IMG/VR virus record: IMGVR_UViG_3300033146_002768
Location: 1 to 64,000 of that record
Strand: one strand, 5' to 3'
DNA length: 64,000 bases
Position 1 is the first letter of the stretch; every line of letters begins with the position of its first letter. A program made the position numbers and the translations under genes. Below the pieces are notes generated by a model, which was not told the origin of the DNA, made no database searches, and saw only the letters and a list, made by a program, of their open reading frames with translations. This document shows positions 8,787-51,122 of this stretch, in pieces.

Positions 8787-9140
8787 ATGTATAATTATAA
8801 AGCAATAATTACAAGAGTTGTTGATGGTGATACTTATGATGCTGAAATAGATTTAGGGTTTAATATAAAAGTTAAACAAAGACTAAGATTAAAAGATGTT
8901 GATACTCCTGAAACATGGAGACCTAAAACTGAATCAGAGAGAGCACATGGAATGAAAGCATCTCAATATGTAATGGAATTAATTGAAGGTCAACAAGTAA
9001 CATTAACTTCAGTTAAATCAGCAGTATATTCAAGATATGAAGCATACATTGAAATTAAAGGATATGATTTAGGAACATTAATTACAGAACATGGATTTAC
9101 TAAATTAGATAAATACGAGGATATAAATGATTCAATTTAA
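8787..9140 (+). CDS. Thermonuclease (SNase-like) family nuclease
   Basis: RVVDGDT, RL..VDTPE motifs. Confidence 0.85.
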   Translation: MYNYKAIITRVVDGDTYDAEIDLGFNIKVKQRLRLKDVDTPETWRPKTESERAHGMKASQYVMELIEGQQVTLTSVKSAVYSRYEAYIEIKGYDLGTLITEHGFTKLDKYEDINDSI

Positions 9141-34826: not shown

Positions 34827-35865
34827 AATACAGATAATTTCATGGCTGCTGACCAGGCGCTGTAACTTATCTTGTGATTATTGTGCAATTGTAAAAGATT
34901 ATAAAAATAAACCTCAAAGTTATCCAGACATGAAACATTATTTTGAAAAGGAGATGAACTCAGAGTATGTAATTAAAACTTTAAGAAGAATTAAAAATCA
35001 TAATCCTGATGCTTTCCATATTTTTTATGGAGGTGAACCCTTACTCAGGAAAGACTTAGCGGATATTATTAACTTTTGTAATATTGCTAAAATTCATTAT
35101 ACAATCATTACAAATAATTCTGATGATATTCAAAAATTAATCGAAGAACTATTAGAAAATGTTGAGTATATTGAAGGTATAACATCATCAGTTGATCCTT
35201 TAATTATGGATAAAACTGCTGATAAGTCGAGTGATAGATATAAAAAATGTGTTGCTGGGCTTGAAAGGTTGCAAGGGTTTAAAGGTAAGATAAAAGATAT
35301 TGTTGCAGAGATAACAGTTGATAATAGCAACTTTCAATATTTATATGATTTAGTTAAAATGCTCACTGATATGGGGATTAACAGTGATATAACTACAGTT
35401 GATATTGCAAAGAATAATTATTATGATTTTTCAAATATTAGAAGTAATAAGAACGCTGACTTAGTTCCGAAGTTGCCAAGCACTATGGCAATGTTTCAAA
35501 AGATTATTAATGATAAATTAAATGTTCATATGGCTGAGACATTATTACCTCAGATATATGATATTCTACCAGCAGAATTAGATTGTGAATTAGAAAAAAA
35601 TATTCATAATATGACTATTGATGCTGATGGAAGCATGCGCATGTGTTTGAGAATTCGTGGAGTATTAACTCCTAACATGAAAGCATATGATTGCATTATG
35701 GATAATGGAGAATTGCACCCAATATTCAAAGAATTAATTAGTATTGACAAAAGAAATTATTGTTTGGGGTGCAATTGGAGTTGTCCAATTATGAGCCGTT
35801 TATTATTAAAAGGAGAAGATAATGTTGAATCTTTAGTCCATTATGAAACAAGAAATAAAAAATAA
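34816..35865 (+). CDS. Radical SAM protein
   Basis: AGGAGG RBS before TTG 34816; CNLSCDYC, GGEP, C-terminal Cys cluster (CLGCNWSC). Confidence 0.88.
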   Translation: MKNKIQIISWLLTRRCNLSCDYCAIVKDYKNKPQSYPDMKHYFEKEMNSEYVIKTLRRIKNHNPDAFHIFYGGEPLLRKDLADIINFCNIAKIHYTIITNNSDDIQKLIEELLENVEYIEGITSSVDPLIMDKTADKSSDRYKKCVAGLERLQGFKGKIKDIVAEITVDNSNFQYLYDLVKMLTDMGINSDITTVDIAKNNYYDFSNIRSNKNADLVPKLPSTMAMFQKIINDKLNVHMAETLLPQIYDILPAELDCELEKNIHNMTIDADGSMRMCLRIRGVLTPNMKAYDCIMDNGELHPIFKELISIDKRNYCLGCNWSCPIMSRLLLKGEDNVESLVHYETRNKK

Positions 35866-36826
35866 ATATTATGTTTATGTTTACTTAAATCCATTTAAAC
35901 CTGGTTCATATGAATATTCTAATTATAAATTTTCATATGAACCATTTTATATTGGGAAAGGGTGTGGGAAAAGATTATATGATCATTTAAAAATTGATAA
36001 ATGCAATATTATAAAAAATGAAATAATAGAAGAATTATTAGAATACAATAATCCTCCTATTATTATAAAATTTAAAAAATATTTAGATGAAGCAGAAGCA
36101 TATTCTATAGAAAAAGATATGATTAATATTATAGGTAGAATTATTAATTCAACTGGTCCATTGTCTAATATTCAACCAGGAGGTAATGGGTTTAAAGGTT
36201 GGTTCATAACTGAAAATTGGTTAAAAAGAAATCGTGAAGGAATAAAAAAACGATGGTTAAAAAAAGAAAATCATATTAATCTTAGTAAATCTTTAAAAAA
36301 AGCTTTTCGTTGTAAAAAAGTTAGAAAAAAAATGAGTGAATTAATGAAACTTGAATGGAAAGATCCTATTAAAAGAGAAAAAAGAATAAAATCCCAAAAT
36401 ACTGAATATGTAAAAAATAAAAAAAGTATAGCTTCCATTAAAAAAAATAGTTTAACTTGGATATTAATTAGTCCTAAAGGTAAAAGATATAAAACAAATA
36501 GATTAAAAATATTTTGTAAAAAATTTAATCTATCAGTTGAACCTTTACAAAGAGTAGCTATGGCTAAACAATTACATCATAAAAAATGGATTTGTTTTAA
36601 ATATGGAAAAGAATATGAAACAATATGGCTATTAACTTTATTAAGATTAAAAAAAATATTAACTGAAATAAACAGAAGGAGAAAATTAGCAATTACTTCC
36701 ACAGGTAGAATTAAAACTATCGAAGAAAAGAATAAAATAGGTTCTTCAACTAAACAAAGATATATTAAATTAAAGAAGGAGACTTCAAATGAAGGAAGAT
36801 CTAAAAAAAGTATGTCAGAATTGTAA
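35843..36826 (+). CDS. GIY-YIG-type homing endonuclease
   Basis: YYVY...PFYIGKG...R...H; E..A..IE...I...G...GPLSN...GG. Confidence 0.8.
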   Translation: MKQEIKNKYYVYVYLNPFKPGSYEYSNYKFSYEPFYIGKGCGKRLYDHLKIDKCNIIKNEIIEELLEYNNPPIIIKFKKYLDEAEAYSIEKDMINIIGRIINSTGPLSNIQPGGNGFKGWFITENWLKRNREGIKKRWLKKENHINLSKSLKKAFRCKKVRKKMSELMKLEWKDPIKREKRIKSQNTEYVKNKKSIASIKKNSLTWILISPKGKRYKTNRLKIFCKKFNLSVEPLQRVAMAKQLHHKKWICFKYGKEYETIWLLTLLRLKKILTEINRRRKLAITSTGRIKTIEEKNKIGSSTKQRYIKLKKETSNEGRSKKSMSEL

Positions 36827-36923: not shown

Positions 36924-37232
36924 ATGGCAGAAGACAATGTATTATCAAGCGCCATTGACTTTTATCAAAAGATAAAAGCAGAGGATGAGGTTAGGATAAA
37001 ATTTAGAAAGTTAAGTGGTGAAGAAAGAATTATGAGATGCACCTTAGATTTTTCTAAAGTTCCAAATAATAAAAAACCTAAGGATGTAAATATAGGTAAA
37101 ATTCTAAAACTTGTCCAGGATCATAAGATGGTTCATGTATTTGATCTTGATATAGGTGATTGGAGAACTGTACCATTTGATAGAAGTGAATGGTTAGAAA
37201 CCGATACAGCAAGATTTAGAATAAAGAAATAA
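36924..37232 (+). CDS. WYL_2/SH3-like phage protein
   Basis: F.K.SGE.R.M.CTL ... V.VFDLD...WR. Confidence 0.7.
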   Translation: MAEDNVLSSAIDFYQKIKAEDEVRIKFRKLSGEERIMRCTLDFSKVPNNKKPKDVNIGKILKLVQDHKMVHVFDLDIGDWRTVPFDRSEWLETDTARFRIKK

Positions 37233-37242
37233 AGGAGATCTA

Positions 37243-37602
37243 ATGTCAATTTTAAAAGATCTATTAAAGGAAGTTAAATCATTAAAATTAGATGAACAAC
37301 TTAGAGTTATTTGTGATGAAATTTTTAAAGAAGAGGTTCCTGATCCTGATGAATATGAAGGACCACAGGGAGCAAATATCTTTTTGTCAATTCCAGTTGT
37401 TATACCTCAAAATAAAAAACATGCACATTTTATTTGTTTAGAGAGGGAAGCTGCTGGAGCTTATATTGTTTCTTATTGGAGTAATTTAATTACTACAGAA
37501 GCACCTCCAAAAAGACATAAGGCATGGGACATAAAAAATGATGATCCACAAAAAATTTTAAAGGAGTTTGTCGAAAGACTACAATTTTTGAAAGGAGAAT
37601 AA
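37243..37602 (+). CDS. Hypothetical protein
   Basis: ORF with AAGGAG RBS. Confidence 0.6.
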   Translation: MSILKDLLKEVKSLKLDEQLRVICDEIFKEEVPDPDEYEGPQGANIFLSIPVVIPQNKKHAHFICLEREAAGAYIVSYWSNLITTEAPPKRHKAWDIKNDDPQKILKEFVERLQFLKGE

Positions 37603-37606
37603 AACT

Positions 37607-40183
37607 GTGAATACAGATGAAGTTATTATAGGTCCTGATTATACAAGTATTATTGCTGGGAATGATGATGTACAAGGATTCCATAGAGACTTGAAAATCG
37701 GAGAAAAAACTGAAGTTCCATTTAATCCTTTATGTAGAAGAAGGACTATTAGAACAAGTGATTTTTATGCTAATTTGAAAAATAAAATTTCACCAACAAC
37801 TGAGGTTTTACCTGACGGATGTAAGTTTTTTGATATTAGCACAACTGGTAGTAAAATGTTTGTTATTGAGCAACCGCCAAACATTAGAACCATTAGGGTT
37901 GATATTGGGATAGAGCAGTTAATTGAAAAATTAAGATTAACTGGTAAATTAAAAGAATATGGATATGAGAATTATAAAAAAGATTTTAAAAGACATAAAG
38001 ACGGATATTATAATTTTCAACTTGCATTTCCATTTGTTGTTTTAATTATTGTATTAAATTCAAGAAATGAAATGTGCGAAATTCAACCATTCTTTAGAAC
38101 TACACCAGTTACAAGTGTATTAGATCATTTATATATAGCACCATTGTATAATGTTCCTACTGAACAAACGATGTGTATGGGGAGTGGTATTAGATCTTAC
38201 AATAGTATTTCCGAAACGATTGATAACATTGTTGAACATTTCTGGATAAATGTCTATAACCAAGATTATACAAACAACTTGACTAAATATGGAAAAACTG
38301 AAGAATACCGAGTTCATGATTATTTAACTTGGGCATACTTTACAAAACAAGATCCGATGTTTGTATTTGATGTCGACTGGATTCCATATCATTTAAAAAT
38401 AGTTGATATTTTAAACAATATTAATACGAAGAGAGGTAGAACAAATTCATCTCATGATTCATATAATAGTATTTTTGGATCGGCATTTGAAGCTACATCG
38501 ACAAGAAATAATACCAAAGCAATAGTTCATAATACAACATATTCAATGGCAATAAAACAGGGAGTCACAATAACTGTTGGTGATGAAATTTCATACAAAG
38601 ATGAAAAGATGTATTTATATTCAATTTTAGCTGATAAAAATGGTTCATATGCAGGAGTTGAACTTGAAAATGAAAAGGGTGAAATTGAACATATAGAGTT
38701 TAAAACTTTTGAGAAAAACTACAAAAATGCAATTAAAATTGTAAAACTCGATAAAGTTATTATAAACGGTAAGACGCTTAGCGAAGGGGATATTATTTCT
38801 TTTGATGTTCTTGGAAACACAGTTTATAAAACAGTTCAATCAATCAGACAAGCTAAAGATGGTAGATTGGAAGCACTGATGAATAATGATCACTATCTAA
38901 TTGATAATTTAAAATTTGATATATTCGATTCATCAGCAATAAAAATAAATGGCTTACCTATTGATAAGAAAGGCACGTATCATATGCTTGCTATTCAAGA
39001 CAGTAGCTGTCCTCTTTATCAAGTTTATGATTGTAAATTTCATTCACTTAGTGTTGGAAGTGGTAGTAGTATATCAATTAAATTTGAAGCAACAAATGGT
39101 AATATGTATTACTTGAATCATAAAAATCATTTAGCTGGAACATCTGAATATGAGTTTATCAATAATGATTTAATTGAAATTCCTCCAGTTTTAATGTGGT
39201 TTGATAAATTAATGACTAATAGAAAGGTAACTGAGTATAACGAACATTTTAAAATTATAAAGGGTCGTGGTATAAGTGTTGGTATTGGAATGAGAGTTAG
39301 AAGTTATTTTAATGGTGGTCAAGAGATATTAAAAACAATATTAATAGAAGACAATACTAGGTTACATATTCCAACTATTGGAACAGATATTGACTTTAGA
39401 GTTGGTGATCCAATTGTTTATGCTGGATGGAAAAATCCAGAAGATATGTTATTGATTTCTTCTATTACAAGATTTGAATATGATGAAAATCGGAATATGT
39501 TTTATGTTTATAGTATGACTTTGAATAAAAAGAAAGAGTTTAAAATTCCTTTTATTAATTTTGGAAATAATAGAGTTAATGTTGGAATTATTAGGAAAGT
39601 TACATCAAAATTTGGTACCTGGTCATCTGGTGATAAAATTATTGCTGAAACGCCTGGAGTAACTAACTTTCCTAAAAAGGATGTTAATACTATTATTGCT
39701 TTTATTGATGATGGTAATGTTAAATATCCATTAGCACTTTGTTCTAACTTATGTACTTTATGGATGAATGATGATACCATGAGCAAGTTTAAAGTACTTA
39801 AGTTTAAATCAGCACCATGGAAAAAAGTTGAGAGTAATTTATTTAATATAGAAAAAATTAAATATCAACATGGTGATATGTTTAGATCTACTCAATATAA
39901 TTTCTCATCTATTTATGTTGCTACAAAACGAAATGGATCAAGTTATGGAATGGATCTATCATATTGTAGTAATTATGGAACTATCGACAATGGAGGAGAA
40001 GCTAATAAAAGCTATCTAGATCGTTCTTTTATAAGATATGGAATTTTAACACCTCGATATGCAACTACATCTTCTCAAGCTTCCAAGATTTCACAAGGAT
40101 TCCCGAATATGTTAGGTGGATATTATTTTAACAAGTATGCAGGAACTTACTTTAGAAGTGATCAATTTAAGGAGGATTTTTAA
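37607..40183 (+). CDS. Prokaryotic E2 family D-like protein (PRTRC protein B-like) with a ~600-aa C-terminal extension
   Basis: FPF, HLYIAPLYNV...MCMG (Cys190), FW...YN; sits in a JAB/ThiF/Ubl context. Confidence 0.7.
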   Translation: MNTDEVIIGPDYTSIIAGNDDVQGFHRDLKIGEKTEVPFNPLCRRRTIRTSDFYANLKNKISPTTEVLPDGCKFFDISTTGSKMFVIEQPPNIRTIRVDIGIEQLIEKLRLTGKLKEYGYENYKKDFKRHKDGYYNFQLAFPFVVLIIVLNSRNEMCEIQPFFRTTPVTSVLDHLYIAPLYNVPTEQTMCMGSGIRSYNSISETIDNIVEHFWINVYNQDYTNNLTKYGKTEEYRVHDYLTWAYFTKQDPMFVFDVDWIPYHLKIVDILNNINTKRGRTNSSHDSYNSIFGSAFEATSTRNNTKAIVHNTTYSMAIKQGVTITVGDEISYKDEKMYLYSILADKNGSYAGVELENEKGEIEHIEFKTFEKNYKNAIKIVKLDKVIINGKTLSEGDIISFDVLGNTVYKTVQSIRQAKDGRLEALMNNDHYLIDNLKFDIFDSSAIKINGLPIDKKGTYHMLAIQDSSCPLYQVYDCKFHSLSVGSGSSISIKFEATNGNMYYLNHKNHLAGTSEYEFINNDLIEIPPVLMWFDKLMTNRKVTEYNEHFKIIKGRGISVGIGMRVRSYFNGGQEILKTILIEDNTRLHIPTIGTDIDFRVGDPIVYAGWKNPEDMLLISSITRFEYDENRNMFYVYSMTLNKKKEFKIPFINFGNNRVNVGIIRKVTSKFGTWSSGDKIIAETPGVTNFPKKDVNTIIAFIDDGNVKYPLALCSNLCTLWMNDDTMSKFKVLKFKSAPWKKVESNLFNIEKIKYQHGDMFRSTQYNFSSIYVATKRNGSSYGMDLSYCSNYGTIDNGGEANKSYLDRSFIRYGILTPRYATTSSQASKISQGFPNMLGGYYFNKYAGTYFRSDQFKEDF

Positions 40184-40184
40184 T

Positions 40185-41309
40185 ATGTTTCCAATTTGGA
40201 TGAATGATGGAGAAACAGAAATGCCGACAGACGATATATTTTATATCGTAGCGAAAGATGGAATTTATTTGAAGAAGAGTATGGGACATTTTGATACTGT
40301 ATCAAAAGTAGATGAAATCTCAATGCTCGGAGAATGTGAATCGTTTGCATTACTCCATGTATCAAAAATTACAACGAGACAATTTGCTCAGATCCTTACT
40401 TTATTTAGGGAGGTTTATAAAAAATATAAAGCAGAATGTAATGTAATTTTACATTATAACATCAAAAGAAAAAGATATAGAATTGAAGTACCTCGACAGG
40501 ACGTATCAGGAGCAAGTGTTGATTATGCAAATGGTGAAGAATCTTATAAAAATTATATAAGAATCGGAACTATTCATAGTCATGCTAATATGACAGCATT
40601 TCATTCAGGAACAGATCAGAGTGACGAAGAAGGTTGGGATGGATTACATATCACTCTTGGAAAGATGGATGAAGATTATTTTGAAATATCTTGTTCTGTT
40701 ATGTCAAGTGGTGAAAGATTCATGGTTAATCCAGAAGATTACATTGAAGGAGTTGAGCTTATTGAATATGAAGTTCAGCGAAGTTATAAAGTTTATTCGT
40801 GGGAGAAAGGAAAGCAAATTGAGAAACCCCTTGAAAGAAAACTGGGTTATATCACTAATGCCCCTGAGAAAGATTTATGTCATCCAAAGAAATGGATGGA
40901 CAATGTTGATAAACATATACCAAAAGCGGTATCTCGTTATGGTGGTTACAATTATGGACAGTATGGAATGTATGGACATAATTATGTACCTGGTATGTAT
41001 TCCAGTAGAAGATCAATAGAAAATTTCTATGATTATACAAATCCAAAAGGAGATGGTTTAACGGTTGGTCAAAATGCATTATTTTCTGATTTGGAAATCG
41101 GAGACGATGAATGGAATGCTTGTATTCAATGTCCTTATAAAGAACATAAAGTTGGTGCATTAATTGAATCATATTTGAAACAGGCAACAGAAGATGAATT
41201 AGCAGAAATGGGGTTATTTTATCTTGAACTTGCTGATGAAACAGACAATTCTTTTGATGTTAATGAAAATGGTATAGACATAAACAAAGGCACTCAAGCT
41301 AAAAAATAG
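40185..41309 (+). CDS. JAB/MPN metallopeptidase (PRTRC protein A-like deubiquitinase)
   Basis: AGGAGG RBS; N-terminal YIVAKDGIYL; upstream Glu (AEC); HSH...AFHSGTD..DE JAMM motif. Confidence 0.88.
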   Translation: MFPIWMNDGETEMPTDDIFYIVAKDGIYLKKSMGHFDTVSKVDEISMLGECESFALLHVSKITTRQFAQILTLFREVYKKYKAECNVILHYNIKRKRYRIEVPRQDVSGASVDYANGEESYKNYIRIGTIHSHANMTAFHSGTDQSDEEGWDGLHITLGKMDEDYFEISCSVMSSGERFMVNPEDYIEGVELIEYEVQRSYKVYSWEKGKQIEKPLERKLGYITNAPEKDLCHPKKWMDNVDKHIPKAVSRYGGYNYGQYGMYGHNYVPGMYSSRRSIENFYDYTNPKGDGLTVGQNALFSDLEIGDDEWNACIQCPYKEHKVGALIESYLKQATEDELAEMGLFYLELADETDNSFDVNENGIDINKGTQAKK

Positions 41310-41321
41310 GAGATTTAGAAT

Positions 41322-42002
41322 ATGAACATTGTAGTTATAGGATTGGGTGGAGTTGGATCTATACTTTGTGACAATTTAGCCAGATATTTAAATTACTCAG
41401 ATGACTTAAAAGCAACTGTTAATTTAATTGATGGTGATCACTTTGAAGCAAAGAATAGTATTAGACAAACATTTATTAGATTGGGTGACAAAGCTGCAGT
41501 CAAAAAGGCTGAATTAAGTCATAGATTTGATAACGTTAATTTTCTGGATTTCAATGAGTTTATCAATGAAGATAATGTAAGTGCATTGATTCCTGAAGAT
41601 TCAATTGTTTTTATATGTGTTGACAATCATATATCAAGAAAAGTTATTTCTGATCATTGTTCAACACTTCAAAATATTACTGTCGTATCTGGTGGAAATG
41701 AATATACAGATGGTAATGTGCAACTACATAAACGAGAAGGAGGTAAGAATGTCACTGCGTCATTAACGGAGTATCATCCAGAGATTGAGTACCCCGAGGA
41801 TCAATCTCCAGAAGATATGAGTTGTGAAGAGTTATCACACTCTGAGCCACAGCTATTGTTCACGAATTTAACCGTTGCAACAATAATGTGTTGGGTGTTC
41901 TATGCAATTCATAAAGGTGAAGATGTAACAAAATGTGGCGAAATTTATTTTGACATAACGTCAATGGCTACATTAGCGAAAAAGAGAAATTCTAGAATTT
42001 AA
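41322..42002 (+). CDS. ThiF/E1-like ubiquitin-activating enzyme
   Basis: GLGGVG, DGD...N..RQ, K, CVDN..SR, catalytic-type SCEE (Cys168), Q...N. Confidence 0.9.
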   Translation: MNIVVIGLGGVGSILCDNLARYLNYSDDLKATVNLIDGDHFEAKNSIRQTFIRLGDKAAVKKAELSHRFDNVNFLDFNEFINEDNVSALIPEDSIVFICVDNHISRKVISDHCSTLQNITVVSGGNEYTDGNVQLHKREGGKNVTASLTEYHPEIEYPEDQSPEDMSCEELSHSEPQLLFTNLTVATIMCWVFYAIHKGEDVTKCGEIYFDITSMATLAKKRNSRI

Positions 42003-42033
42003 CTTAAGAAAAAATTATTTAGGAGAATTAAAC

Positions 42034-42993
42034 ATGACTACCGAAACTATTGAAACTTTGAATACTAAAACAGTTGCACAGCTTAAAGACATCCTTAGAG
42101 CAAGAAAAATCGTTGGGATGTTCAAGAAACCCAAAGCAGTTATTATTAAAGCAATCGTTGATGCTGCTACTTCTGCATCAGTTGCATCTGCAAAACCTGC
42201 TATTAAATCTAAAGCTGCAGTACCTACAAAGATTACTGCTGCAAAATTTAATATGTCAAGTGTTATGACAAAACCCAATGCAAAACCTGGCGACAAAACT
42301 ACAACTACCATTCAGGTATCTTGTGGTGCTAACTCTGCAGATTTCCCTGTTACTGGAAAACCTGTTGGTGCTGTTCAGGAATTTCTTAAAGAAGTTCTTA
42401 ATATCGACAGACTCGCTGAGGGTCAGGTTGCTGGTAAACCTGTTGGTTCTGATTATATCTTGAAAGAAGGCGATGTACTTGAGTTCATCAAACCTGCTGG
42501 TCGTAAGGGTGCTGATGAAACTGCCACATCTCTTGATAAACTAACTGTTGTTGGACTTAAAGATATTCTAAGAGCCCGTAAAATTGTTGGATATTTTAAA
42601 GCTGGTAAAGCTGGAATCATTGCTGCTATCCTTGCTGATACTGCTGCAAAAGCTGATTTCCCTTCTACTGCACCTGCTGCTGTTAAAGCTAAAAATGCTG
42701 TACCTACAAAGATTACTGCAGCAAAATTTAACATGACAAGTGTTATGACAAAACCTAATGCAAAGGTTGGTGATAAAACCACAACTACCATTCAGGTATC
42801 TTGTGGTGCTAACTCTTCTGACTTCCCTGTTGTTGGTAAACCTGTTGGGGCAGTTCAGGAATTCCTTAAAGAAGTCTTGAATATTGATAGACTTGCTGAG
42901 GGTCAGGTTGCTGGTAAACCTGTAGGTTCTGATTATGTACTTGCAGAAGGTGATGTACTTGAGTTTATTAAACCTGCTGGTCGTAAAGGCTAG
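42034..42993 (+). CDS. Tandem (Rho_N-like domain, linker, ubiquitin-like domain) x2, each ending KPAGRKG
   Basis: Units at 42034-42510 and 42511-42990. L..KTV.QLK.I.R...I.G..K..K..II is a Rho_N/HeH pattern; the beta-grasp-like part ends EGDVLEFIKPAGRKG. Confidence 0.8.
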   Translation: MTTETIETLNTKTVAQLKDILRARKIVGMFKKPKAVIIKAIVDAATSASVASAKPAIKSKAAVPTKITAAKFNMSSVMTKPNAKPGDKTTTTIQVSCGANSADFPVTGKPVGAVQEFLKEVLNIDRLAEGQVAGKPVGSDYILKEGDVLEFIKPAGRKGADETATSLDKLTVVGLKDILRARKIVGYFKAGKAGIIAAILADTAAKADFPSTAPAAVKAKNAVPTKITAAKFNMTSVMTKPNAKVGDKTTTTIQVSCGANSSDFPVVGKPVGAVQEFLKEVLNIDRLAEGQVAGKPVGSDYVLAEGDVLEFIKPAGRKG

Positions 42994-43009: not shown

Positions 43010-43043
43010 AATTAAGGGGTGGGTTAATTCTCACCCCTTAATT
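43010..43043 (+). terminator. Stem-loop after the Ubl gene
   Basis: AATTAAGGGGTGGG-TTAATT-CTCACCCCTTAATT. Confidence 0.6.
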
Positions 43044-43055
43044 AAAAGGAGAATC

Positions 43056-43538
43056 ATGACTGATATAACTTTAATTGAAGAAACAGAAAAGTATTATCTT
43101 GGTGAAATTGATAATAAAGTAGTAAAGTTATTTAAAATTAATACAAAAGATATGGAGACTAAACGCCAAGAAGAATTGAATATACTTGCTGGATTTTTAG
43201 ATGATGAAAACATAATCAATTTATTAATTCAATGTGATCAAATTATAACTATGCCTCCAACAGTTGATGTTTATATGGAAGTATGCAATGTATTAATTAC
43301 AAGACTTAAAAATATTGAAGAAGAAATTTTAAATAAAGGAAATGCGAGAAACATTTGTTTTCAATATATAAAACAACTTGATCCTTCTTACTATGGAAAA
43401 GCTCAAACTTTTATGAAGAATATAAAATTCTTATATTCAGATTTAATTCAAATAATGAAGTTAATGGAACATAGAGGTTTAACTGATTATAAATTAAAAG
43501 ATACAGAACTTCTAAGTTTTGATAAAATTAAGTCTTGA
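43056..43538 (+). CDS. Hypothetical helical protein
   Basis: ORF with AAGGAG RBS. Confidence 0.6.
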   Translation: MTDITLIEETEKYYLGEIDNKVVKLFKINTKDMETKRQEELNILAGFLDDENIINLLIQCDQIITMPPTVDVYMEVCNVLITRLKNIEEEILNKGNARNICFQYIKQLDPSYYGKAQTFMKNIKFLYSDLIQIMKLMEHRGLTDYKLKDTELLSFDKIKS

Positions 43539-43587
43539 TTTATGAAATTGTATCATATATAATATGAAACAAATTGGAGTGAATGAA

Positions 43588-44463
43588 ATGTATAAACGAA
43601 TAGCAGTTATTGGAGTGGGGTCATTGGGAGGTTTCTTTGCTGAAAGCATTTCTAAGATTAAAGATTTACAAACATTAATATTAATAGATCCAGATTTCGT
43701 TGAGGAAAAGAATCTGAATAAATCTATTTATCGAAAAAGAGATATAGGAGTTTATAAAGTTTATGCTTTAAGATCAATTATTCGAGAAAAAAATGAGAAT
43801 TTGATTATCGAATCATCTCCTATTGAATATATTGAAAGAAAGATACAAATGCCTGAGGTTGATCTTGTTGTTGATTGCAGAGATGAAATTGTTAGTAGAT
43901 GTGGCGAAATAGATATTAGATTATATATTGCATATAGAACTCTAATTCTTGATTGTAAAAAGATTCATAAAGTTGAGAAATCGTTAGCGGGAAAATATAT
44001 TCATAATTTGAATATGTTTGAAATTTCATCAGTAGCAAATGCAGTTGCTCAATTAATATATTCAGGTAGAATAAAAGAATTTATTAATAAAGAAATTATT
44101 TATCAAATACCAGTAGATACATCTTTAAAAGATGCTAATGAATGTCTTGATGATTTTAATAATTGTCCTGATATAGTAGTAGATCATTATGCAGGGTCAG
44201 AAATTATTAGAAACCTTCATATAACTCTTCCAAAAATAGTTGAACTTAATAAAACAAAAGCGTTATCAATTATTGTTGGAGAAGCTGAATGTTTAAGTGT
44301 TGATGTTTTAACTGTTAAAAGAAATGAGATTTCTAAATATGGAGAAGCAGTTAAATACTTAACAGATTTAACTCAAAGTTTAGTGCCTCATAAAGAGTAT
44401 TACACAGTTAAAGTAAATAAGAAAGGATACATTGAGCTCTTACCTGAAACAGGAGCAGCATAA
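43588..44463 (+). CDS. Second, divergent ThiF/E1-like protein
   Basis: IAVIGVGSLGG, IDPDFVEEKNLNK, DIG.YKV, DLVVDCRD; the C-terminal half is unrecognised. Confidence 0.75.
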   Translation: MYKRIAVIGVGSLGGFFAESISKIKDLQTLILIDPDFVEEKNLNKSIYRKRDIGVYKVYALRSIIREKNENLIIESSPIEYIERKIQMPEVDLVVDCRDEIVSRCGEIDIRLYIAYRTLILDCKKIHKVEKSLAGKYIHNLNMFEISSVANAVAQLIYSGRIKEFINKEIIYQIPVDTSLKDANECLDDFNNCPDIVVDHYAGSEIIRNLHITLPKIVELNKTKALSIIVGEAECLSVDVLTVKRNEISKYGEAVKYLTDLTQSLVPHKEYYTVKVNKKGYIELLPETGAA

Positions 44464-45290: not shown

Positions 45291-48011
45291 ATGCCAACAT
45301 TATTAAATTTTGAAGAATTTTGTGAAGATTTGAAAGAGATAACTACAACCAAGTATCTTAATAAAAAACAATTTCATCCAGAAGGATTGTTTTCAGAACA
45401 GATATTTGGTCCATCTAAAAACTATACATGCCAGTGTGGAACATATTGGGGAATTTCTGGATCAGGTGGTACTTGTGCAACATGTGAAGTTGATGTTGTA
45501 AATAGCAATGTTAGACGTAAAAGATTTGCTAAGATAATTCTACCAGTTCCAGTTGTTAATCCATTATTCTATGATCTTGTTTGTGATCTTGGCGGACGTC
45601 AGGTCAAAGCTGCTTTAGATCAACTCATGAAAGATGAGAATAGTATAATGATTTTTGATGAAGAAGAGCAAGAATGGCTTGTAGAAAAACAAGATCCAGA
45701 GAATATTGATAGAAATGCTTTAGTTGGAACAAATGCAATTCAAGTTTTGATTGAAGATTTGACTGATGCAGTATTAGCAGCAGGTGATACAACTTGGGAA
45801 GTTATTAAAGATAATATTGATCAATTGATTATAAGTCATGTTGTTGTTCTTCCTCCTGATTTAAGACCAGCTTCTAAAAAGGTTAGTCGAAAAGGTCAGG
45901 TATCATCTGATAAAATCAATAGATTTTATACTCAGATATTAACAAAGAAAGAAGCATTTGCTGAAACTAATTGTGATGTTAGAGTTGATAGAAATTTATA
46001 TTATAATTACTATCGACAATTACAAAAAGATGTTAATGAACTTTATGCATTTATACTTGAGAAAATGTCAAAAAAAGAAGGATTGATTCGTGGTAATATT
46101 CTTGGTAAGCGAATTGATTTCTCTGGTAGAGCAGTAATTGTTCCTGATCCAACTTTAAATATGGATCAATGTTCATTACCATACTTGATGTTTCTTGAAT
46201 TATTTAAGTTGAAAATTGCAAAGAAAATTATTGATCTTGGTAGATTTAAAAAGATTAATAATGCAATTGATTTTATTGATGATTGTATTGAGATTAATAA
46301 TCCTGTATTATTTAATACTTGTGAAGAGATTGCTGTAGATGAAGTATGTATTTTAAATCGTCAACCTTCTTTGCATAGATTAAGTTTATTGGGATACAGA
46401 ACCAAAGTTTCTTTAGATAAAGTTATTAAGATTCACCCTCTTTCATGTCCTCCATTTAATGCGGATTTTGATGGTGATCAAATGGCTGTATATATTCCAA
46501 TCAGTGAAGAAAGTAAACAAGAAGTATTAGATAGATTACTAGTTATTAGAAATCTAACTAACCCTTCAAATGGTAGTTTGTCAACCACACCAAGTCAAGA
46601 TGTTATACTTGGACTATATGCTGTGTCTCATGAAGTATTTGAAGATTTACAGTATGATGTTGAATGTAAAGGTAAAACGATTAAAGCTGATAGAGCTTTA
46701 TTGAATGATTGTTTTCCAGAAGATTATCCAGTTATTGATGAACATGTTGGCGGAAAAAGAATTAAAGAAATTTTAAGTGATATAAATTTCAGATATTCAA
46801 ATGAAATAACAGCAGATGTGTTGGATAAGATTAAGTTCCTTGGTTTTAAATACTCCACATTATTTGGAGCAACACTTTCATTAGATGAAATGTTCATAGA
46901 AGGTTGTTATGAAAAACGTGATTCATTATATGCGGGTGAAACAATAATGGAACAGTTAGAGATGGTATCTAATGATGAAACAACTCAATATCTTAGAGAT
47001 AATTTTAATTATGCTTATATGGTAGAGTCTGGTGCCAGAGGTAGTTGGGATCAGGTAAGACAGATAGTATTAACTCGAGGTTTCATCTCAAATTTTAGAG
47101 GTGAAATTATTGAAAGACCGATTAAACATAGTTTCATAAATGGTCTTACTCCTCAAGAGTTCTTTGATTCAACTAATGGTAGCCGTAAAGGATTACTTGA
47201 TGTTGCATTGAATACTGGTACATCTGGATATCTATCAAGAAAGTTAATCTTTACCTGCGCTAATCTTCAAATTGATAGAACATTTGATGATTGCGGAACA
47301 ACTGATCTTCTTCAAGTATTTGTTGATAATGAGAAGAAAGCTAAAATGTTAATCGGTAAACATTTTATGGAAAGTGGTAATCTTATTAAAATGACTGAGT
47401 ATAACTATCTTGGTTATGTTGGTAAGACAATTGAAATTAGAAGTCCTATATTTTGTAAAAATGATAAGGTTTGTAAAACTTGTTATGGTGAATTACATGA
47501 AGTAATTGATACTGATTTTATTGGGGTAATTGCAGCTCAGAGTCTTGGGGAATGTAATACTCAGTTGGTATTGAGAACTTTTCATACATCAGGTGTTGCA
47601 GTTGTTGGTAAGAATAATGAAGATGGTTCTAATGATATGAAACAACAGGATATTGTTGCTGATTTATCTACAGTATCAAAACTTCTTCATAAATTTCCAA
47701 AAGATACAACTCCAGCAGCTTTGGTTGCCAAATTATATACTTGTTATAACAGTAGTAGAACTATTCATCATGTTCATTTTGAATGTGTTGTGTCTCAGTT
47801 GATGTGGTTTGGTACTTCTAAATGGAGATTAGTTGACAATAGAGAGAATGTTGTACCTAAGTACCTTTCTGTTCAAACTGTCCCATCAAATGAAAGTTGG
47901 CTAATGGGATTAGCATTCTCTAATCCAAAGAAGCATATAATCAAGGGTATTTTAGAATCTGGTTTATATCATGGAGTTATGGATAAAATACTCTGTGGAG
48001 AAGAAGTTTAA
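45291..48011 (+). CDS. rpoC: RNA polymerase beta' subunit (set 2), intact
   Basis: GLFSEQIFG, CQCG..CATC, PP.LRP, GKRIDFSGR, NRQPSLH, NADFDGDQM, TSGYLSRKL, RTFH. Confidence 0.97.
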   Translation: MPTLLNFEEFCEDLKEITTTKYLNKKQFHPEGLFSEQIFGPSKNYTCQCGTYWGISGSGGTCATCEVDVVNSNVRRKRFAKIILPVPVVNPLFYDLVCDLGGRQVKAALDQLMKDENSIMIFDEEEQEWLVEKQDPENIDRNALVGTNAIQVLIEDLTDAVLAAGDTTWEVIKDNIDQLIISHVVVLPPDLRPASKKVSRKGQVSSDKINRFYTQILTKKEAFAETNCDVRVDRNLYYNYYRQLQKDVNELYAFILEKMSKKEGLIRGNILGKRIDFSGRAVIVPDPTLNMDQCSLPYLMFLELFKLKIAKKIIDLGRFKKINNAIDFIDDCIEINNPVLFNTCEEIAVDEVCILNRQPSLHRLSLLGYRTKVSLDKVIKIHPLSCPPFNADFDGDQMAVYIPISEESKQEVLDRLLVIRNLTNPSNGSLSTTPSQDVILGLYAVSHEVFEDLQYDVECKGKTIKADRALLNDCFPEDYPVIDEHVGGKRIKEILSDINFRYSNEITADVLDKIKFLGFKYSTLFGATLSLDEMFIEGCYEKRDSLYAGETIMEQLEMVSNDETTQYLRDNFNYAYMVESGARGSWDQVRQIVLTRGFISNFRGEIIERPIKHSFINGLTPQEFFDSTNGSRKGLLDVALNTGTSGYLSRKLIFTCANLQIDRTFDDCGTTDLLQVFVDNEKKAKMLIGKHFMESGNLIKMTEYNYLGYVGKTIEIRSPIFCKNDKVCKTCYGELHEVIDTDFIGVIAAQSLGECNTQLVLRTFHTSGVAVVGKNNEDGSNDMKQQDIVADLSTVSKLLHKFPKDTTPAALVAKLYTCYNSSRTIHHVHFECVVSQLMWFGTSKWRLVDNRENVVPKYLSVQTVPSNESWLMGLAFSNPKKHIIKGILESGLYHGVMDKILCGEEV

Positions 48012-48035: not shown

Positions 48036-51000
48036 TTGACTATAGAAAATCCGATATATAAAGTTGGCGATGAAAGAAATCATATCTTTAGTATTCGACA
48101 GCAAGAGTATGCAGCTCTTTTGGAGAATGTACGACAGATACTGATCCCAGCAGAAGAATTAGGATTTGATCTAGTAGAATATAGATTGAAAGAGCCTAGA
48201 TTTTCAAACGGTGAAATTTGTAAAACAATTAAAAAGAACCTTATTATAAGGTTTCAGAAAGGTACCTCAAAGATTGATTTATCAATGCAAGTTCCTACAT
48301 TGATAAATGATAACTATATTGTTATTAACGGAAGACAGAAAATACCATTATTTCAGTTGTTCGATATTCCTATTGTTACAAGAGGGAAGAGTATTAAGAT
48401 AAGAACAAATGTTGCAACATTAATGATATTTCCACAAAAAGAAGCGCCATATATCTATATCAGCATTTTGGGTAGAAAAGTTCCTTTACACCTTATAATG
48501 TTTGGTTATTATGGAATTGAAGAAATGAATGAACGTTTTGGTCTATCTGATATGGCTGATGCGCCAATGGTTGATAATTTGGATCCAAAAGATCCAAGGT
48601 TACTTTATACAAAATTAATCTATGATTTAAAAATGTTTTATGATGATTCAAGAGGAATAACTCAAGATGATATCATAAAAGAGATTGGGAGAAATTATTC
48701 TCAATACAATGCTAAATCTAAAGGTGAAGATATAATTTATGCTATAGATTTAATTTTGAAAGTAGATCCTATTTCAGCCGAGTTCTTTGAAACTGGAAAT
48801 CTCCTTGATGAAATTGTTAAAACATTAGATGATGGTTATCTTGATGATACTCTTTTGACGAATAAAAGAATTAGATGTTTTGAATATGTTGTATTAGCAA
48901 AAATATCCAAAGCAGTATTTGATATGTGTATGTCAAATAGAACAGCAAGACAACCTAAATTCAATGTTAACTCAACTATGATATTATCTGAGTGTAATGT
49001 ATCTGACATTGTCCAATTTGATTTTGCTATAAATCCAATTGATGAATTAACTAAGTTAAGCAGGACTAGTTTAGTTGGTCCTGGAGGTTTTAATCGACAG
49101 AATGTCCCAGAACATTTAAGGGATATTATGCCAAGTATGTTTGGTAGGTTGTGTCCTGTAGATACTCCTGATAGAGATAATTGTGGTGTTCTACAAAATT
49201 TGATTCCAAATGTTCCTCTTGATGATAATGGTAGATTTAATGAATATTATCTTGAGAAACAACCTATATCAATTCCAGTATCTTTAGTACCATTTCTGGA
49301 ACATGATGACCAGACAAGATTACAAATGGCATCTTCACAAATGAGACAAGCAATTATGTTACAAAACTTTGACCAACCAATGATTAAATCTGGTTGTGAA
49401 AGTTTATATACTAAATATACTCAGTTTGTTAAGATTGCAAAGAAATCCGGAAAAGTTATACATCTGGATAGTAATTACATTATCGCTTTATACGATGATA
49501 AAACAATTGATATATTTGATGTTACATATAGAAAAATCTATATATCAAATTTAGATGTATTTAATGTATATGTTAAACATGGTGACAAATTTAATGCTGG
49601 AGATATTTTAGCAGAAAGTAATTTTTGTAAAGATGGTAGCATTAATATTGGAAAAAATCTTCTAACTGCAGTTATGGTTTATTATGGCTACAATTATGAG
49701 GATGGAATTATCATATCAGAGAGACTTCAGAAAGAAGGGGTTTTCACATCTGTTCATTTTGAGGATATGTCGTTTGATATTCCAATGAGTAAAGTTCTTC
49801 TAACTTTAGATGATAAAGGAAGTTATATGCCGATTCCTAAAGTTGGAGATAGAATTGCTAAAGGACAACCTTATGCAATTATGAAAGAATTTCCAAATCA
49901 ACAAATGGACTTCTTTGATATATTTAAAGAAGAACAGAAGAAACTATCCAAACAAAATGTTATTATTACTGAGGTTAATTTATATGTGAATCAATGGTGC
50001 ACAGATATACCTCAGTACAATGATTGGGTTGAAAAAATCATTAAGGAACAACAAGATGAAGAGTTAAAAATTAAGATTATAATTGAAGAAAATCTTGAAA
50101 AAGATAAGGTCAAGAATTTCATCAAACAAAATAATCTTGACTTGTTTGATAACGTAGGAAAATTTAAAATGAAGGGTGAAGAAATCCCTGGTATTAGAGT
50201 TGAAATGTTTGGAATCTTTTTTAGACCTATTCAGATTGGGGATAAAATAGGCAACAGACATGGTAATAAAGGTGTAATTTCAAATATTATACCTCATGAG
50301 AAAATGCCAATGTTACCCGATGGAAGACATGCTGACATAATTGTAAATCCTTTAGGTACTATTTCAAGGATGAATGTTGGGCAATTGTTTGAATATCATA
50401 TGGGGATGTCTTTATATGATCTTAAAGTTCATATGAAAAAGATTATTAAAAAAGAAGATGAATCAGTTAAAGCTCATAGCTTATCTGAAAATCAAATTCA
50501 ATTACTTGTTAAAGAATATGTTATTGGTTATATAAATATTATTGATAACTCAGATGATAAATGGTATCTTGAACAATTTGAGGAACAATTGCCAGATGTA
50601 ATTGATGAAAAATGGATAGAAGAATTGTCTATTATTCAACCTCCATTTGAGTCAGTAAATATGATTAAAATAAGAGAAGCATTGTCTTATACAGGTACTC
50701 AATTTAAGTATGATATTTTTGATCCTCAATCTGATAAAATGATTCAACAACAAATAGCTTGTGGTTATGGTTATTTCTTTAAGATGGTTCATATTTCCGA
50801 AACACGATTAGCTGCAAGAGGTATTGGGTCATATGCAAGAAAGACTCTGCAACCATTAGCTGGTCGTAAGAATAAAGGTGGTCAAAGATGTGGTGAAATG
50901 GAAACTGCTGCATTAATTGGACATGGAGCTGTTGTTAATTTAAGAGAATTTTTAACAACTAAATCTGATTGTATTGATCTTAAAAATAGATATATTAGAG

Positions 51001-51122
51001 ATCAATTAGATTCTAATTTGGGTAAGGTTGATGATGAAGCTGAAGAAGATTCTATTGTTCCAGAATCAGTTAAACTATTACATGCAAATTTAATTGCATT
51101 AGGATTAAAAAGAGAGGATTAA
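48036..51122 (+). CDS. rpoB: RNA polymerase beta subunit (set 2)
   Basis: CPVDTPD, QMRQA, GYNYEDG, GDKIGNRHGNKG, SRMNVGQ, GGQRCGEME. Confidence 0.96.
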   Translation: MTIENPIYKVGDERNHIFSIRQQEYAALLENVRQILIPAEELGFDLVEYRLKEPRFSNGEICKTIKKNLIIRFQKGTSKIDLSMQVPTLINDNYIVINGRQKIPLFQLFDIPIVTRGKSIKIRTNVATLMIFPQKEAPYIYISILGRKVPLHLIMFGYYGIEEMNERFGLSDMADAPMVDNLDPKDPRLLYTKLIYDLKMFYDDSRGITQDDIIKEIGRNYSQYNAKSKGEDIIYAIDLILKVDPISAEFFETGNLLDEIVKTLDDGYLDDTLLTNKRIRCFEYVVLAKISKAVFDMCMSNRTARQPKFNVNSTMILSECNVSDIVQFDFAINPIDELTKLSRTSLVGPGGFNRQNVPEHLRDIMPSMFGRLCPVDTPDRDNCGVLQNLIPNVPLDDNGRFNEYYLEKQPISIPVSLVPFLEHDDQTRLQMASSQMRQAIMLQNFDQPMIKSGCESLYTKYTQFVKIAKKSGKVIHLDSNYIIALYDDKTIDIFDVTYRKIYISNLDVFNVYVKHGDKFNAGDILAESNFCKDGSINIGKNLLTAVMVYYGYNYEDGIIISERLQKEGVFTSVHFEDMSFDIPMSKVLLTLDDKGSYMPIPKVGDRIAKGQPYAIMKEFPNQQMDFFDIFKEEQKKLSKQNVIITEVNLYVNQWCTDIPQYNDWVEKIIKEQQDEELKIKIIIEENLEKDKVKNFIKQNNLDLFDNVGKFKMKGEEIPGIRVEMFGIFFRPIQIGDKIGNRHGNKGVISNIIPHEKMPMLPDGRHADIIVNPLGTISRMNVGQLFEYHMGMSLYDLKVHMKKIIKKEDESVKAHSLSENQIQLLVKEYVIGYINIIDNSDDKWYLEQFEEQLPDVIDEKWIEELSIIQPPFESVNMIKIREALSYTGTQFKYDIFDPQSDKMIQQQIACGYGYFFKMVHISETRLAARGIGSYARKTLQPLAGRKNKGGQRCGEMETAALIGHGAVVNLREFLTTKSDCIDLKNRYIRDQLDSNLGKVDDEAEEDSIVPESVKLLHANLIALGLKRED

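What the first reader, a model, noticed from the sequence alone, without database searches (positions are those of the whole stretch)
42034..42993. Polyubiquitin-like precursor: two head-to-tail Rho_N-Ubl units
Seen: the 319-aa ORF is a duplication (aa 1-159 and 160-319). Each unit is a Rho_N/HeH-like helical domain, an Ala/Lys/Pro linker and a nearly identical ~70-aa Ubl ending EFIKPAGRKG. The internal junction is G159|A160. The Ubl parts are almost identical while the Rho_N parts have diverged. Codons are strongly biased (GCT/GGT/AAA/CCT) and a strong hairpin follows, suggesting high expression. Inference: as with eukaryotic polyubiquitin, the adjacent JAB could cleave after the internal RKG and release two modifiers, each delivering a different nucleic-acid- or protein-binding Rho_N domain to its target.
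Basis: partly seen in the sequence, partly recalled or inferred. Interest (0 to 1): 0.82.

Follow-up and report, generated by a model that had tools for sequence, protein, structure and literature searches.

The report
Phage two-unit ubiquitin-like modifier precursor
A jumbo phage gene fuses two complete copies of a DNA/RNA-binding-domain-plus-ubiquitin-like modifier head to tail, next to its own E2-like, JAB protease and E1 genes, and comparison with hundreds of relatives suggests, without proving it, that the protease cuts it into two modifiers, much as polyubiquitin is cut in eukaryotes.

Summary
ORF 42034-42993 (+) encodes 319 aa made of two units, aa 1-159 and 160-319. Each unit has a SAP/Rho_N-type helical domain, an Ala/Lys/Pro linker and a ThiS/TGS-type beta-grasp Ubl ending in the same ten residues, EFIKPAGRKG.

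The gene lies in a module conserved in six related phage contigs: E2-like 858-aa protein (invariant Cys190), JAB (intact JAMM motif), ThiF-type E1, Ubl, second ThiF. The JAB, E1 and E2-like proteins match the PRTRC / "6d" type operon below curated cut-offs. All five complete orthologues have one unit, and no second two-unit protein was found among 5.8 billion protein clusters.

The family-wide evidence favours the precursor reading:
- 91% of 147 family representatives have a Ubl ending in KG.
- 44% carry extra residues after that Gly, so they need trimming before activation.
- Relatives with 2-4 head-to-tail Ubl units keep KG at 16 of 17 internal junctions. Tails are identical or nearly so within a protein, although unit bodies share only 24-79% identity.
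- One 4-unit gene sits beside homologues of this JAB and E1.

Cleavage at G159|A160 is inferred, not shown, and the target is unknown. I call it a new variant of a known kind, of moderate to high interest.

The parts
42034..42993 (+). ORF for the 319-aa two-unit SAP-Ubl protein, stop codon included. RBS AGGAG at 42021-42025.
42034..42510 (+). Unit 1 (aa 1-159): SAP/Rho_N-like domain about aa 5-51 (42046-42186), Ala/Lys/Pro linker, conserved pre-Ubl segment aa 61-89 (42214-42300), beta-grasp Ubl aa 90-159 (42301-42510) ending EFIKPAGRKG.
42508..42513 (+). Junction codons GGT|GCT = G159|A160, the proposed JAB cleavage site. A160 aligns with T2 of unit 1.
   Evidence: cleavage is inferred, not shown
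42511..42990 (+). Unit 2 (aa 160-319): diverged SAP/Rho_N-like domain about aa 163-211 (42520-42666), linker, pre-Ubl segment aa 221-249 (42694-42780), Ubl aa 250-319 (42781-42990) ending EFIKPAGRKG then stop.
43010..43043 (+). Perfect 12-bp inverted repeat (14-bp stem when folded) just after the stop codon and just before the next gene's RBS. No T-run follows.
40185..41309 (+). JAB/JAMM metallopeptidase, 374 aa. Motif HSHANMTAFHSGTD at aa 131-144 and Glu84 are invariant in 7 homologues. N-terminal part matches PRTRC system protein A.
41322..42002 (+). ThiF-type E1-like adenylating enzyme, 226 aa. GLGGVGS nucleotide loop; Cys168 invariant in 7 homologues. Matches PRTRC ThiF below its cut-off.
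37607..40183 (+). 858-aa protein. The N-terminal E2-like domain has a sub-threshold Prok-E2_D match at aa 174-235 and an invariant Cys190 in a PLYNV-x5-(M/I)C motif. The C-terminal ~600 aa have no assigned function.
43056..43538 (+). 160-aa protein of unknown function, conserved at this position in L002, L003 and L004.
43564..44463 (+). Second ThiF-like protein, 299 aa, conserved in all related modules. C-terminus ELLPETGAA.
36924..37602 (+). Two small genes that open the conserved module: a WYL_2/Sm-like SH3 protein (36924-37232) and a 119-aa protein (37243-37602).

Best explanation
The gene encodes a precursor of two paralogous ubiquitin-like modifiers. It belongs to a phage-borne E1/E2/JAB conjugation system of the PRTRC ('6d') type.

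Shown by the sequence:
- Two complete SAP/Rho_N-linker-Ubl units are joined head to tail with no spacer.
- Each unit keeps the family's activation tail, which ends in KG.
- The neighbouring genes encode an E2-like protein with an invariant Cys, a JAB with an intact metal site, and a ThiF-type E1 with an invariant Cys.

Inferred mechanism:
1. The JAB cuts the peptide bond after G159. This frees unit 1 with a C-terminal Gly and unit 2 starting at A160.
2. The E1 adenylates the terminal Gly of each unit.
3. The unit passes to Cys190 of the 858-aa E2-like protein.
4. It is then attached to a target, probably through the large C-terminal part of that protein.

The Ubl and the pre-Ubl segment are under purifying selection. 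The two SAP domains have diverged, so the two modifiers would share enzymes but could carry different nucleic-acid- or partner-binding heads. The target and the biological role are unknown.
For: 1. Family-wide C-terminus. Among 147 cluster representatives, the Ubl ends in KG in 134. Eighty-two stop exactly there, and 65 (44%) carry extra residues after the Gly: 46 have 1-3 residues (18 begin with Cys), 9 have 4-15 and 10 have more than 15. A Gly that is not C-terminal cannot be adenylated by an E1 (established E1 chemistry), so the family needs a trimming peptidase.

2. Poly-Ubl relatives. Eleven relatives have 2-4 Ubl units joined head to tail. Sixteen of 17 internal units end in KG. Tails are identical or nearly identical within each protein but differ between proteins, while unit bodies are only 24-79% identical. 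In P0111, for example, bodies share 24% and tails 10/10. This pattern points to selection on the internal tails, not homogenisation of the whole unit.

3. Shared enzymes. The 4-unit gene P0015 is a complete ORF next to homologues of this window's JAB (9.5e-37) and E1 (1.2e-42).

4. Exact junction. G159|A160 with A160 equivalent to T2, no in-frame start nearby, and no intergenic remnant.

5. Competent enzymes. The JAMM motif HxHx7Sx2D and Glu84 are invariant in the JAB. E1 Cys168 and E2-like Cys190 are invariant.

6. Both copies are kept. dN/dS is about 0.11 over aa 61-159 at dS about 0.5, while the SAP part has dN 0.43.

7. Precedent. The bacterial JAB BilC cleaves a BilA-GFP fusion exactly after the reactive Gly (PMC10557695).
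Against: - No experiment or read-level data supports cleavage. Only one contig carries the two-unit gene, and no sequencing run could be listed.
- The internal tail is identical to the terminal one, but the two Ubls are 93% identical anyway, so this gene alone gives no signal of selection on the junction.
- Multi-beta-grasp bacterial Ubls are described as working uncleaved (PMC11601603).
- The E2, JAB and E1 matches to PRTRC/6d models are all below the curated cut-offs.
- Whether this JAB tolerates a folded SAP domain on the C-terminal side of the cut is unknown.
Confidence: 0.58

Rival explanations
1. Uncleaved double modifier. The 319-aa protein is used whole, like ISG15, FAT10, type I BilA or bacterial Ubl2/Ubl3 proteins. 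Only G319 is activated, and the first unit adds a second SAP head and a second beta-grasp surface.
For: Multi-beta-grasp Ubls that are described as acting as one unit occur in bacteria (PMC11601603). SAP-SAP-Ubl relatives (16 of the 150 representatives) show that two SAP heads on one modifier are tolerated. The internal tail could simply not have had time to decay, given 93% Ubl identity.
Against: The two Ubls are separated by a SAP domain and a roughly 45-aa low-complexity linker, not packed together. The junction preserves the complete tail with no spacer. Poly-Ubl relatives keep matching tails on internal units despite 24-50% body identity. At dS about 0.5 there has been time for some change.
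Confidence: 0.27
2. Sulfur carrier. The Ubl is a ThiS/MoaD-type carrier that a ThiF enzyme converts to a thiocarboxylate for a nucleic-acid or cofactor thiolation. The JAB would only trim it, as JAB/JAMM peptidases are said to do for some bacterial sulfur-carrier proteins (my own knowledge, not checked here).
For: Pfam ThiS and TGS matches, and ThiS, MoaD and TtuB among the best structural matches. Two ThiF-type genes lie in the module. A SAP/Rho_N head could bring the carrier to nucleic acid.
Against: The tail is KG with an invariant Lys at position -2, not the Gly-Gly of sulfur carriers. An E2-like protein with an invariant Cys is part of every module. No Pfam match to a sulfurtransferase or to a ThiG/MoaE/TtuA-like partner was found among the nine neighbouring proteins searched.
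Confidence: 0.06
3. Accidental fusion of no special function. A tandem gene duplication lost its stop codon and start region in this one lineage, or in this one assembly, and the product is neutral or on its way to decay.
For: The two-unit form is seen in a single contig among 5.8 billion protein clusters. All five complete orthologues have one unit.
Against: The copies differ at 14% of nucleotides yet the frame is intact over 960 nt. dN/dS is about 0.11 in the Ubl part of both copies. The fusion point is exact. The strong codon bias is kept in both halves.
Confidence: 0.07

Closest known systems
PRTRC / '6d' operons of Iyer, Burroughs and Aravind 2006 (small Ubl, JAB with JAB-N domain, E1-like, E2-like Prok-E2_D, alpha-helical protein)
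   Same: The same set of enzymes lies side by side. The JAB matches TIGR03735 PRTRC_A (3.6e-7), the E1 matches TIGR03736 (1.1e-12), and the E2-like domain matches Pfam Prok-E2_D. That domain has a conserved Cys and lacks the classical His. The Ubl has a conserved terminal Gly.
   Different: All matches are below curated cut-offs. The Ubl is a different family (no Prok_Ub or PRTRC_C match), is fused to a SAP/Rho_N domain and is duplicated here. The E2-like domain heads an 858-aa protein. A second ThiF is present. No alpha-hel2 match was found. The carrier is a jumbo phage and the module sits next to RNA polymerase genes.
Eukaryotic polyubiquitin precursors
   Same: Head-to-tail modifier units with no spacer, each ending in the activation tail. 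Relatives carry a short C-terminal cap (often one Cys) after the last unit. A dedicated peptidase gene is linked (polyubiquitin organisation from my own knowledge).
   Different: Not homologous at family level: the Pfam matches are ThiS/TGS, not ubiquitin. The tail is KG, not GG. The units here are whole two-domain modifiers whose heads have diverged (64% identity). Cleavage is not demonstrated.
Bil systems (BilA Ubl, BilB E2, BilC JAB, BilD E1)
   Same: Separate E1, E2, JAB and Ubl genes. The JAB pre-processes the Ubl after the reactive Gly and can remove a large C-terminal fusion (PMC10557695).
   Different: Bil is a bacterial anti-phage defence, whereas this module is encoded by a phage. 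PADLOC gave only a weak BilD match for the E1 (0.0095) and nothing for the Ubl, the JAB or the 858-aa E2-like protein.
Bacterial multi-beta-grasp Ubls (polyUbl of '6e'/Bub operons, Ubl2/Ubl3)
   Same: More than one beta-grasp domain in one modifier gene. These were noted in 2006 as reminiscent of polyubiquitin.
   Different: Ubl3 proteins were studied as intact three-domain units that form homodimers and Ca2+-dependent filaments, and the paper describes no cleavage into units (PMC11601603). I did not check whether their inner domains keep an activation tail. Here each unit is complete, and the units are separated by a SAP domain and a long linker.

Membership tests
PRTRC / 6d-type Ubl conjugation operon | Small Ubl with a conserved C-terminal Gly | tested here: met
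   K158 invariant and G159 in at least 90% of 84 aligned units. KG ends the Ubl in 134 of 147 representatives.
PRTRC / 6d-type Ubl conjugation operon | JAB peptidase with the N-terminal JAB-N domain (PRTRC system protein A) | tested here: inconclusive
   TIGR03735 match over profile positions 29-182 of 192, E=3.6e-7, but 29.9 bits against a cut-off of 101.8. The JAMM motif and Glu84 are invariant.
PRTRC / 6d-type Ubl conjugation operon | ThiF-type E1-like enzyme | tested here: met
   Pfam ThiF 62.9 bits (cut-off 28.1). PRTRC_ThiF 47.9 bits, below its equivalog cut-off of 144.75.
PRTRC / 6d-type Ubl conjugation operon | E2-like protein (Prok-E2_D) with a conserved Cys and without the classical His | tested here: inconclusive
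   Prok-E2_D 21.7 bits against a cut-off of 25. Cys190 is invariant in 5 orthologues within PLYNV-x5-(M/I)C. Atlas neighbours carry Prok-E2_D (a lead only).
PRTRC / 6d-type Ubl conjugation operon | Alpha-helical protein (alpha-hel2) and, for PRTRC, a ParB-like protein | tested here: not met
   No alpha-hel2 or ParB match among nine neighbouring proteins at E<=0.1. The rest of the window was not searched for ParB.
Polyubiquitin-type precursor | Head-to-tail units without spacer, each with the activation tail | tested here: met
   G159|A160, with A160 aligned to T2. Both tails are EFIKPAGRKG.
Polyubiquitin-type precursor | Units released by a peptidase cutting after the terminal Gly of each unit | not testable with these tools
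   Only indirect evidence: 44% of relatives need trimming, and poly-Ubl relatives keep internal tails.
Polyubiquitin-type precursor | Units belong to the ubiquitin family proper | tested here: not met
   The Pfam matches are TGS and ThiS, with no ubiquitin-family match. The structural matches are generic beta-grasp.
ThiS/MoaD sulfur carriers | C-terminal Gly-Gly and a linked sulfur-acceptor enzyme | tested here: not met
   The tail is KG with invariant Lys at -2. No Pfam match to a ThiG/MoaE/TtuA/rhodanese-type family among the nine neighbouring proteins.
ISG15 / Ubl2-Ubl3-type uncleaved multi-domain modifiers | Beta-grasp domains joined directly into one unit that works uncleaved | tested here: not met
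   The inner unit keeps the full tail. The Ubls are separated by a SAP domain and a long linker. For ISG15, loss of the inner activation tail is from my own knowledge; it was not checked for the bacterial Ubl2/Ubl3 proteins.
SAP / Rho_N (HeH) domain | Helix-extended loop-helix domain matching the family profile | tested here: met
   Pfam SAP 26.8 bits (cut-off 23.9). The family profile matches the Rho N-terminus, 3l0o, at E=8e-5. The AF2 helices have pLDDT 87-97. Binding to nucleic acid was not tested.

The most novel reading that the evidence does not exclude
Phages carry a true polyubiquitin-style gene organisation that arose independently of eukaryotes. One transcript yields several activatable modifiers that a linked JAB releases. 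In this phage the units have become two distinct SAP-headed modifiers sharing one E1/E2. They are conjugated to host or phage proteins on nucleic acid, possibly the transcription machinery encoded next door, to reprogramme the infected cell.
Probability: 0.35. Interest if true: 0.8.

Novelty: new variant of a known kind. Interest (0 to 1): 0.62.

Why it matters
Ubiquitin-like conjugation in bacteria has so far been tied mainly to anti-phage defence (CBASS, Bil), and the PRTRC/6d type has no known function.

This work finds a complete E1/E2/JAB/Ubl set conserved in a lineage of large phages. Its modifier family is almost entirely viral and often needs C-terminal processing. Some members are built as head-to-tail repeats.

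If the JAB does release the units, this would be a prokaryotic-virus counterpart of the polyubiquitin precursor. The two-unit gene would be a natural example of one precursor giving two specialised modifiers.

It would also give a tractable way to learn what phage-encoded Ubl conjugation does, and to which targets.

Tried and rejected
- GenBank phages: tblastn with the 319-aa protein and megablast with 11 kb around it found nothing. The JAB found only distant modules in Vibrio, Salmonella and Acinetobacter phages, and no Ubl of this family was detected in the two loci examined, Vibrio phage D69 and Acinetobacter phage ME3.
- A single-sequence AF2 model of the whole protein was unusable (mean pLDDT 40).
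- No sequencing run could be listed for the region, so neither read support for the junction nor expression could be examined.
- Gene conversion keeping the Ubl parts alike. The dS estimates differ (1.3 against 0.5). At identical residues, synonymous differences are 15/33 against 25/90, p=0.08. Suggestive but not significant, so no claim is made.
- ThiF2 C-terminal region as a fused Ubl: hhalign against the Ubl profile and a PDB profile search gave nothing.
- Contexts of other poly-Ubl relatives (P0129, P0018, P0084): the contigs were too short or uninformative.
- A genome-contig scan with the full alignment failed for lack of a conserved stretch. The repeat with the Ubl-only alignment found one locus, a phage-like contig binned as an archaeal MAG.
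- The antisense ORFs inside the gene (42015-42311 and 42453-42791, minus strand) are repeats of each other. I read them as by-products of the codon bias and did not test them further.

Full report
**What is there**

The window is part of a 207-kb viral contig, IMGVR_UViG_3300033146_002768. It is AT-rich (28.8% GC). It carries RNA polymerase beta- and beta'-like genes, topoisomerase II subunits and an SbcC-like gene, so it looks like a jumbo phage.

ORF 42034-42993 (+) encodes 319 aa. The protein is a duplication: aa 1-159 and aa 160-319. The last 100 residues of the two units are 93% identical. The N-terminal helical domains are 64% identical (25/39). At DNA level, 42188-42487 and 42668-42967 are 86% identical, so the repeat is not an assembly artefact of identical copies.

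G159 is followed directly by A160, and A160 aligns with T2 of unit 1. Unit 2 is therefore a copy of residues 2-159 appended with no spacer, no Met and no in-frame start nearby.

**Domains**

- Pfam gives SAP, TGS and ThiS above their cut-offs.
- A profile of 84 homologous units matches the N-terminal helical domain of Rho (E=8e-5). Some relatives carry precomputed Rho_N hits.
- The AF2 model of unit 1, built with that alignment, shows a confident helix-loop-helix head (pLDDT 87-97) and a moderately confident C-terminal domain.
- The best PDB matches of that domain are all beta-grasp modifiers or carriers: ThiS, RnfH, MoaD, SUMO, TtuB and NEDD8. The E-values are weak, 0.1-0.3.

The codon bias is real and strong. 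The hairpin after the stop is real but lacks a T-run.

**Surroundings**

The genes in order are:
- a WYL_2/Sm-like protein and a 119-aa protein;
- an 858-aa protein whose aa 174-235 match Prok-E2_D just below the Pfam cut-off;
- a JAB (40185-41309);
- a ThiF-type E1 (41322-42002);
- the two-unit gene;
- a 160-aa protein;
- a second ThiF (43564-44463);
- two small genes, then RNA polymerase beta'.

NCBIfam places the JAB nearest PRTRC system protein A and the E1 nearest PRTRC ThiF, both below the equivalog cut-offs.

The catalytic residues look intact. The JAMM motif and Glu84 of the JAB are invariant in seven homologues. So is Cys168 of the E1, and Cys190 of the E2-like domain is invariant in five orthologues. 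Cys190 sits in a PLYNV-x5-(M/I)C motif that resembles the E2 active-site region without the His.

This matches the '6d' operon type of Iyer et al. 2006: Ubl, JAB with JAB-N, E1-like, and an E2-like protein lacking the classical His (PMC1779556). I found no match to the alpha-helical or ParB components among the neighbouring proteins searched.

**Relatives**

The module from the WYL_2-like gene to RNA polymerase beta' recurs in L002, L003, L005, L006 and L013, and partly in L004. In all five complete cases the Ubl gene has one unit of 147-183 aa.

A word-indexed search of 5.8 billion protein clusters for proteins of 175-558 aa found no second two-unit protein.

An exhaustive phmmer search of 1.8 billion representatives found 416 relatives. 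Among the best 150 the architectures are:
- SAP-Ubl, 86
- Ubl alone, 37
- SAP-SAP-Ubl, 16
- two, three or four tandem Ubls, 10 by domain parse; an eleventh, P0083, was parsed as ubl-sap-ubl with overlapping hits

The window's SAP-Ubl-SAP-Ubl is unique in this set. Atlas neighbours are almost all viral. A scan of 185,579 species genomes with one narrow pattern found only a phage-like contig binned as an archaeal MAG.

**Evidence for a precursor**

The Ubl ends in KG in 134 of 147 representatives, and Lys at -2 is invariant in the alignment.

Eighty-two stop exactly at the Gly. The other 65 (44%) continue: 46 by 1-3 residues (18 begin with Cys), 9 by 4-15 residues and 10 by more than 15. An E1 needs the Gly carboxylate free, so these members must be trimmed. 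The linked JAB is the obvious candidate. A bacterial JAB, BilC, has been shown to cut a BilA-GFP fusion exactly after the reactive Gly (PMC10557695).

Eleven relatives have 2-4 Ubl units joined head to tail.
- Sixteen of 17 internal units end in KG.
- Tails are identical or nearly so within each protein but differ between proteins.
- Unit bodies share only 24-79% identity.

Homogenisation would also have evened out the bodies, so the tails of the internal units appear to be under their own selection. That is what release and activation of every unit predicts.

The 4-unit gene (P0015) is a complete ORF with a 5-residue cap. It lies beside clear homologues of this window's JAB and E1.

**What this gene adds, and what it cannot tell**

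Both copies of the Ubl and the pre-Ubl segment are under purifying selection: dN/dS is about 0.11 at dS about 0.5. The SAP heads and linkers have diverged, with dN 0.43.

Unit 1's head is as close to the orthologues' heads as it is to unit 2's. Unit 2's head is the more derived.

The identical internal tail is not informative by itself, given 93% identity across the Ubl. A hint that the 3' parts were homogenised is not significant (p=0.08).

Only one contig carries this form, and no reads could be examined.

**Verdict**

The most likely reading is a polyubiquitin-like precursor of two paralogous SAP-headed modifiers, served by a phage-borne PRTRC/6d-like E1/E2/JAB system (confidence about 0.58).

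The main rival is use of the uncut protein as a double modifier (about 0.27). It is weakened by the exact junction, the wide separation of the two Ubls, and the behaviour of the poly-Ubl relatives. A sulfur-carrier role and an accidental fusion are less likely.

The target and purpose of the conjugation are unknown. The constant position next to RNA polymerase genes and the nucleic-acid-type head are only hints.

In the paper library searched I found no description of this phage module or of the SAP-Ubl family. The general ideas are published: tandem Ubls in bacteria, and JAB pre-processing.

Noticed in passing
window 43564-44463; L002 7559-8443; L003 9080-9967; L004 727-1671: The second ThiF-like protein ends in an invariant ELLP(E/D)TG(A/G)A tail after a roughly 80-aa region that looks beta-grasp-like by eye. 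This could be a fused Ubl-like domain. Profile comparison with the Ubl family and with the PDB gave no support.
   Followed up: partly
family representatives P0008, P0014, P0023, P0030 and others: Eighteen of the 65 family members whose Ubl is followed by extra residues have Cys as the first residue after KG, and 18 of the 150 representatives end in exactly KGC. This single-residue cap is over-represented and unexplained.
   Followed up: partly
P0139, P0119, P0141: The same Ubl also occurs at the N-terminus of longer proteins. One has what looks by eye like an acetyltransferase-type C-terminal part, one a basic C-terminal region, and one a long, apparently membrane-associated tail. In each the Ubl still ends in a family-type tail before the fusion partner: KG in P0119 and P0139, KA in P0141.
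   Followed up: no
L007 7188-8366: A retron-type reverse transcriptase gene (retron St85 family, 240 bits) lies two genes downstream of the E1 in the cluster that holds the 4-unit Ubl gene.
   Followed up: no
L011 (Acinetobacter phage vB_AbaM_ME3), L012 (Vibrio phage D69): Isolated phages carry distant versions of the JAB and E1. In D69, a 229-aa protein with an E2-like Cys motif precedes the JAB. In ME3, a 72-aa ORF ending in Gly follows the ThiF gene. These are possible laboratory models for phage Ubl conjugation. The SAP-Ubl family itself was not detected in either locus.
   Followed up: partly
L013 (DAOVGR010000079.1): This contig is labelled as a Thermoplasmatales archaeon MAG. It has 28% GC and the same phage module, including RNA polymerase beta', so it is probably a phage contig that was mis-binned.
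   Followed up: partly
window 9127-13227, 45291-48011, 48036-51122: The window holds two RNA polymerase beta-like genes and one beta'-like gene, which suggests more than one phage-encoded multisubunit polymerase.
   Followed up: no
window 35843-36826: This ORF has a GIY-YIG-like N-terminal motif (seen by eye only) just upstream of the module. L002 has a related ORF at the same relative position.
   Followed up: no
window 42015-42311 and 42453-42791, minus strand: Two antisense ORFs of 98 and 112 aa lie inside the gene and repeat each other. They are most likely by-products of the repeat and of the codon bias, not genes.
   Followed up: no
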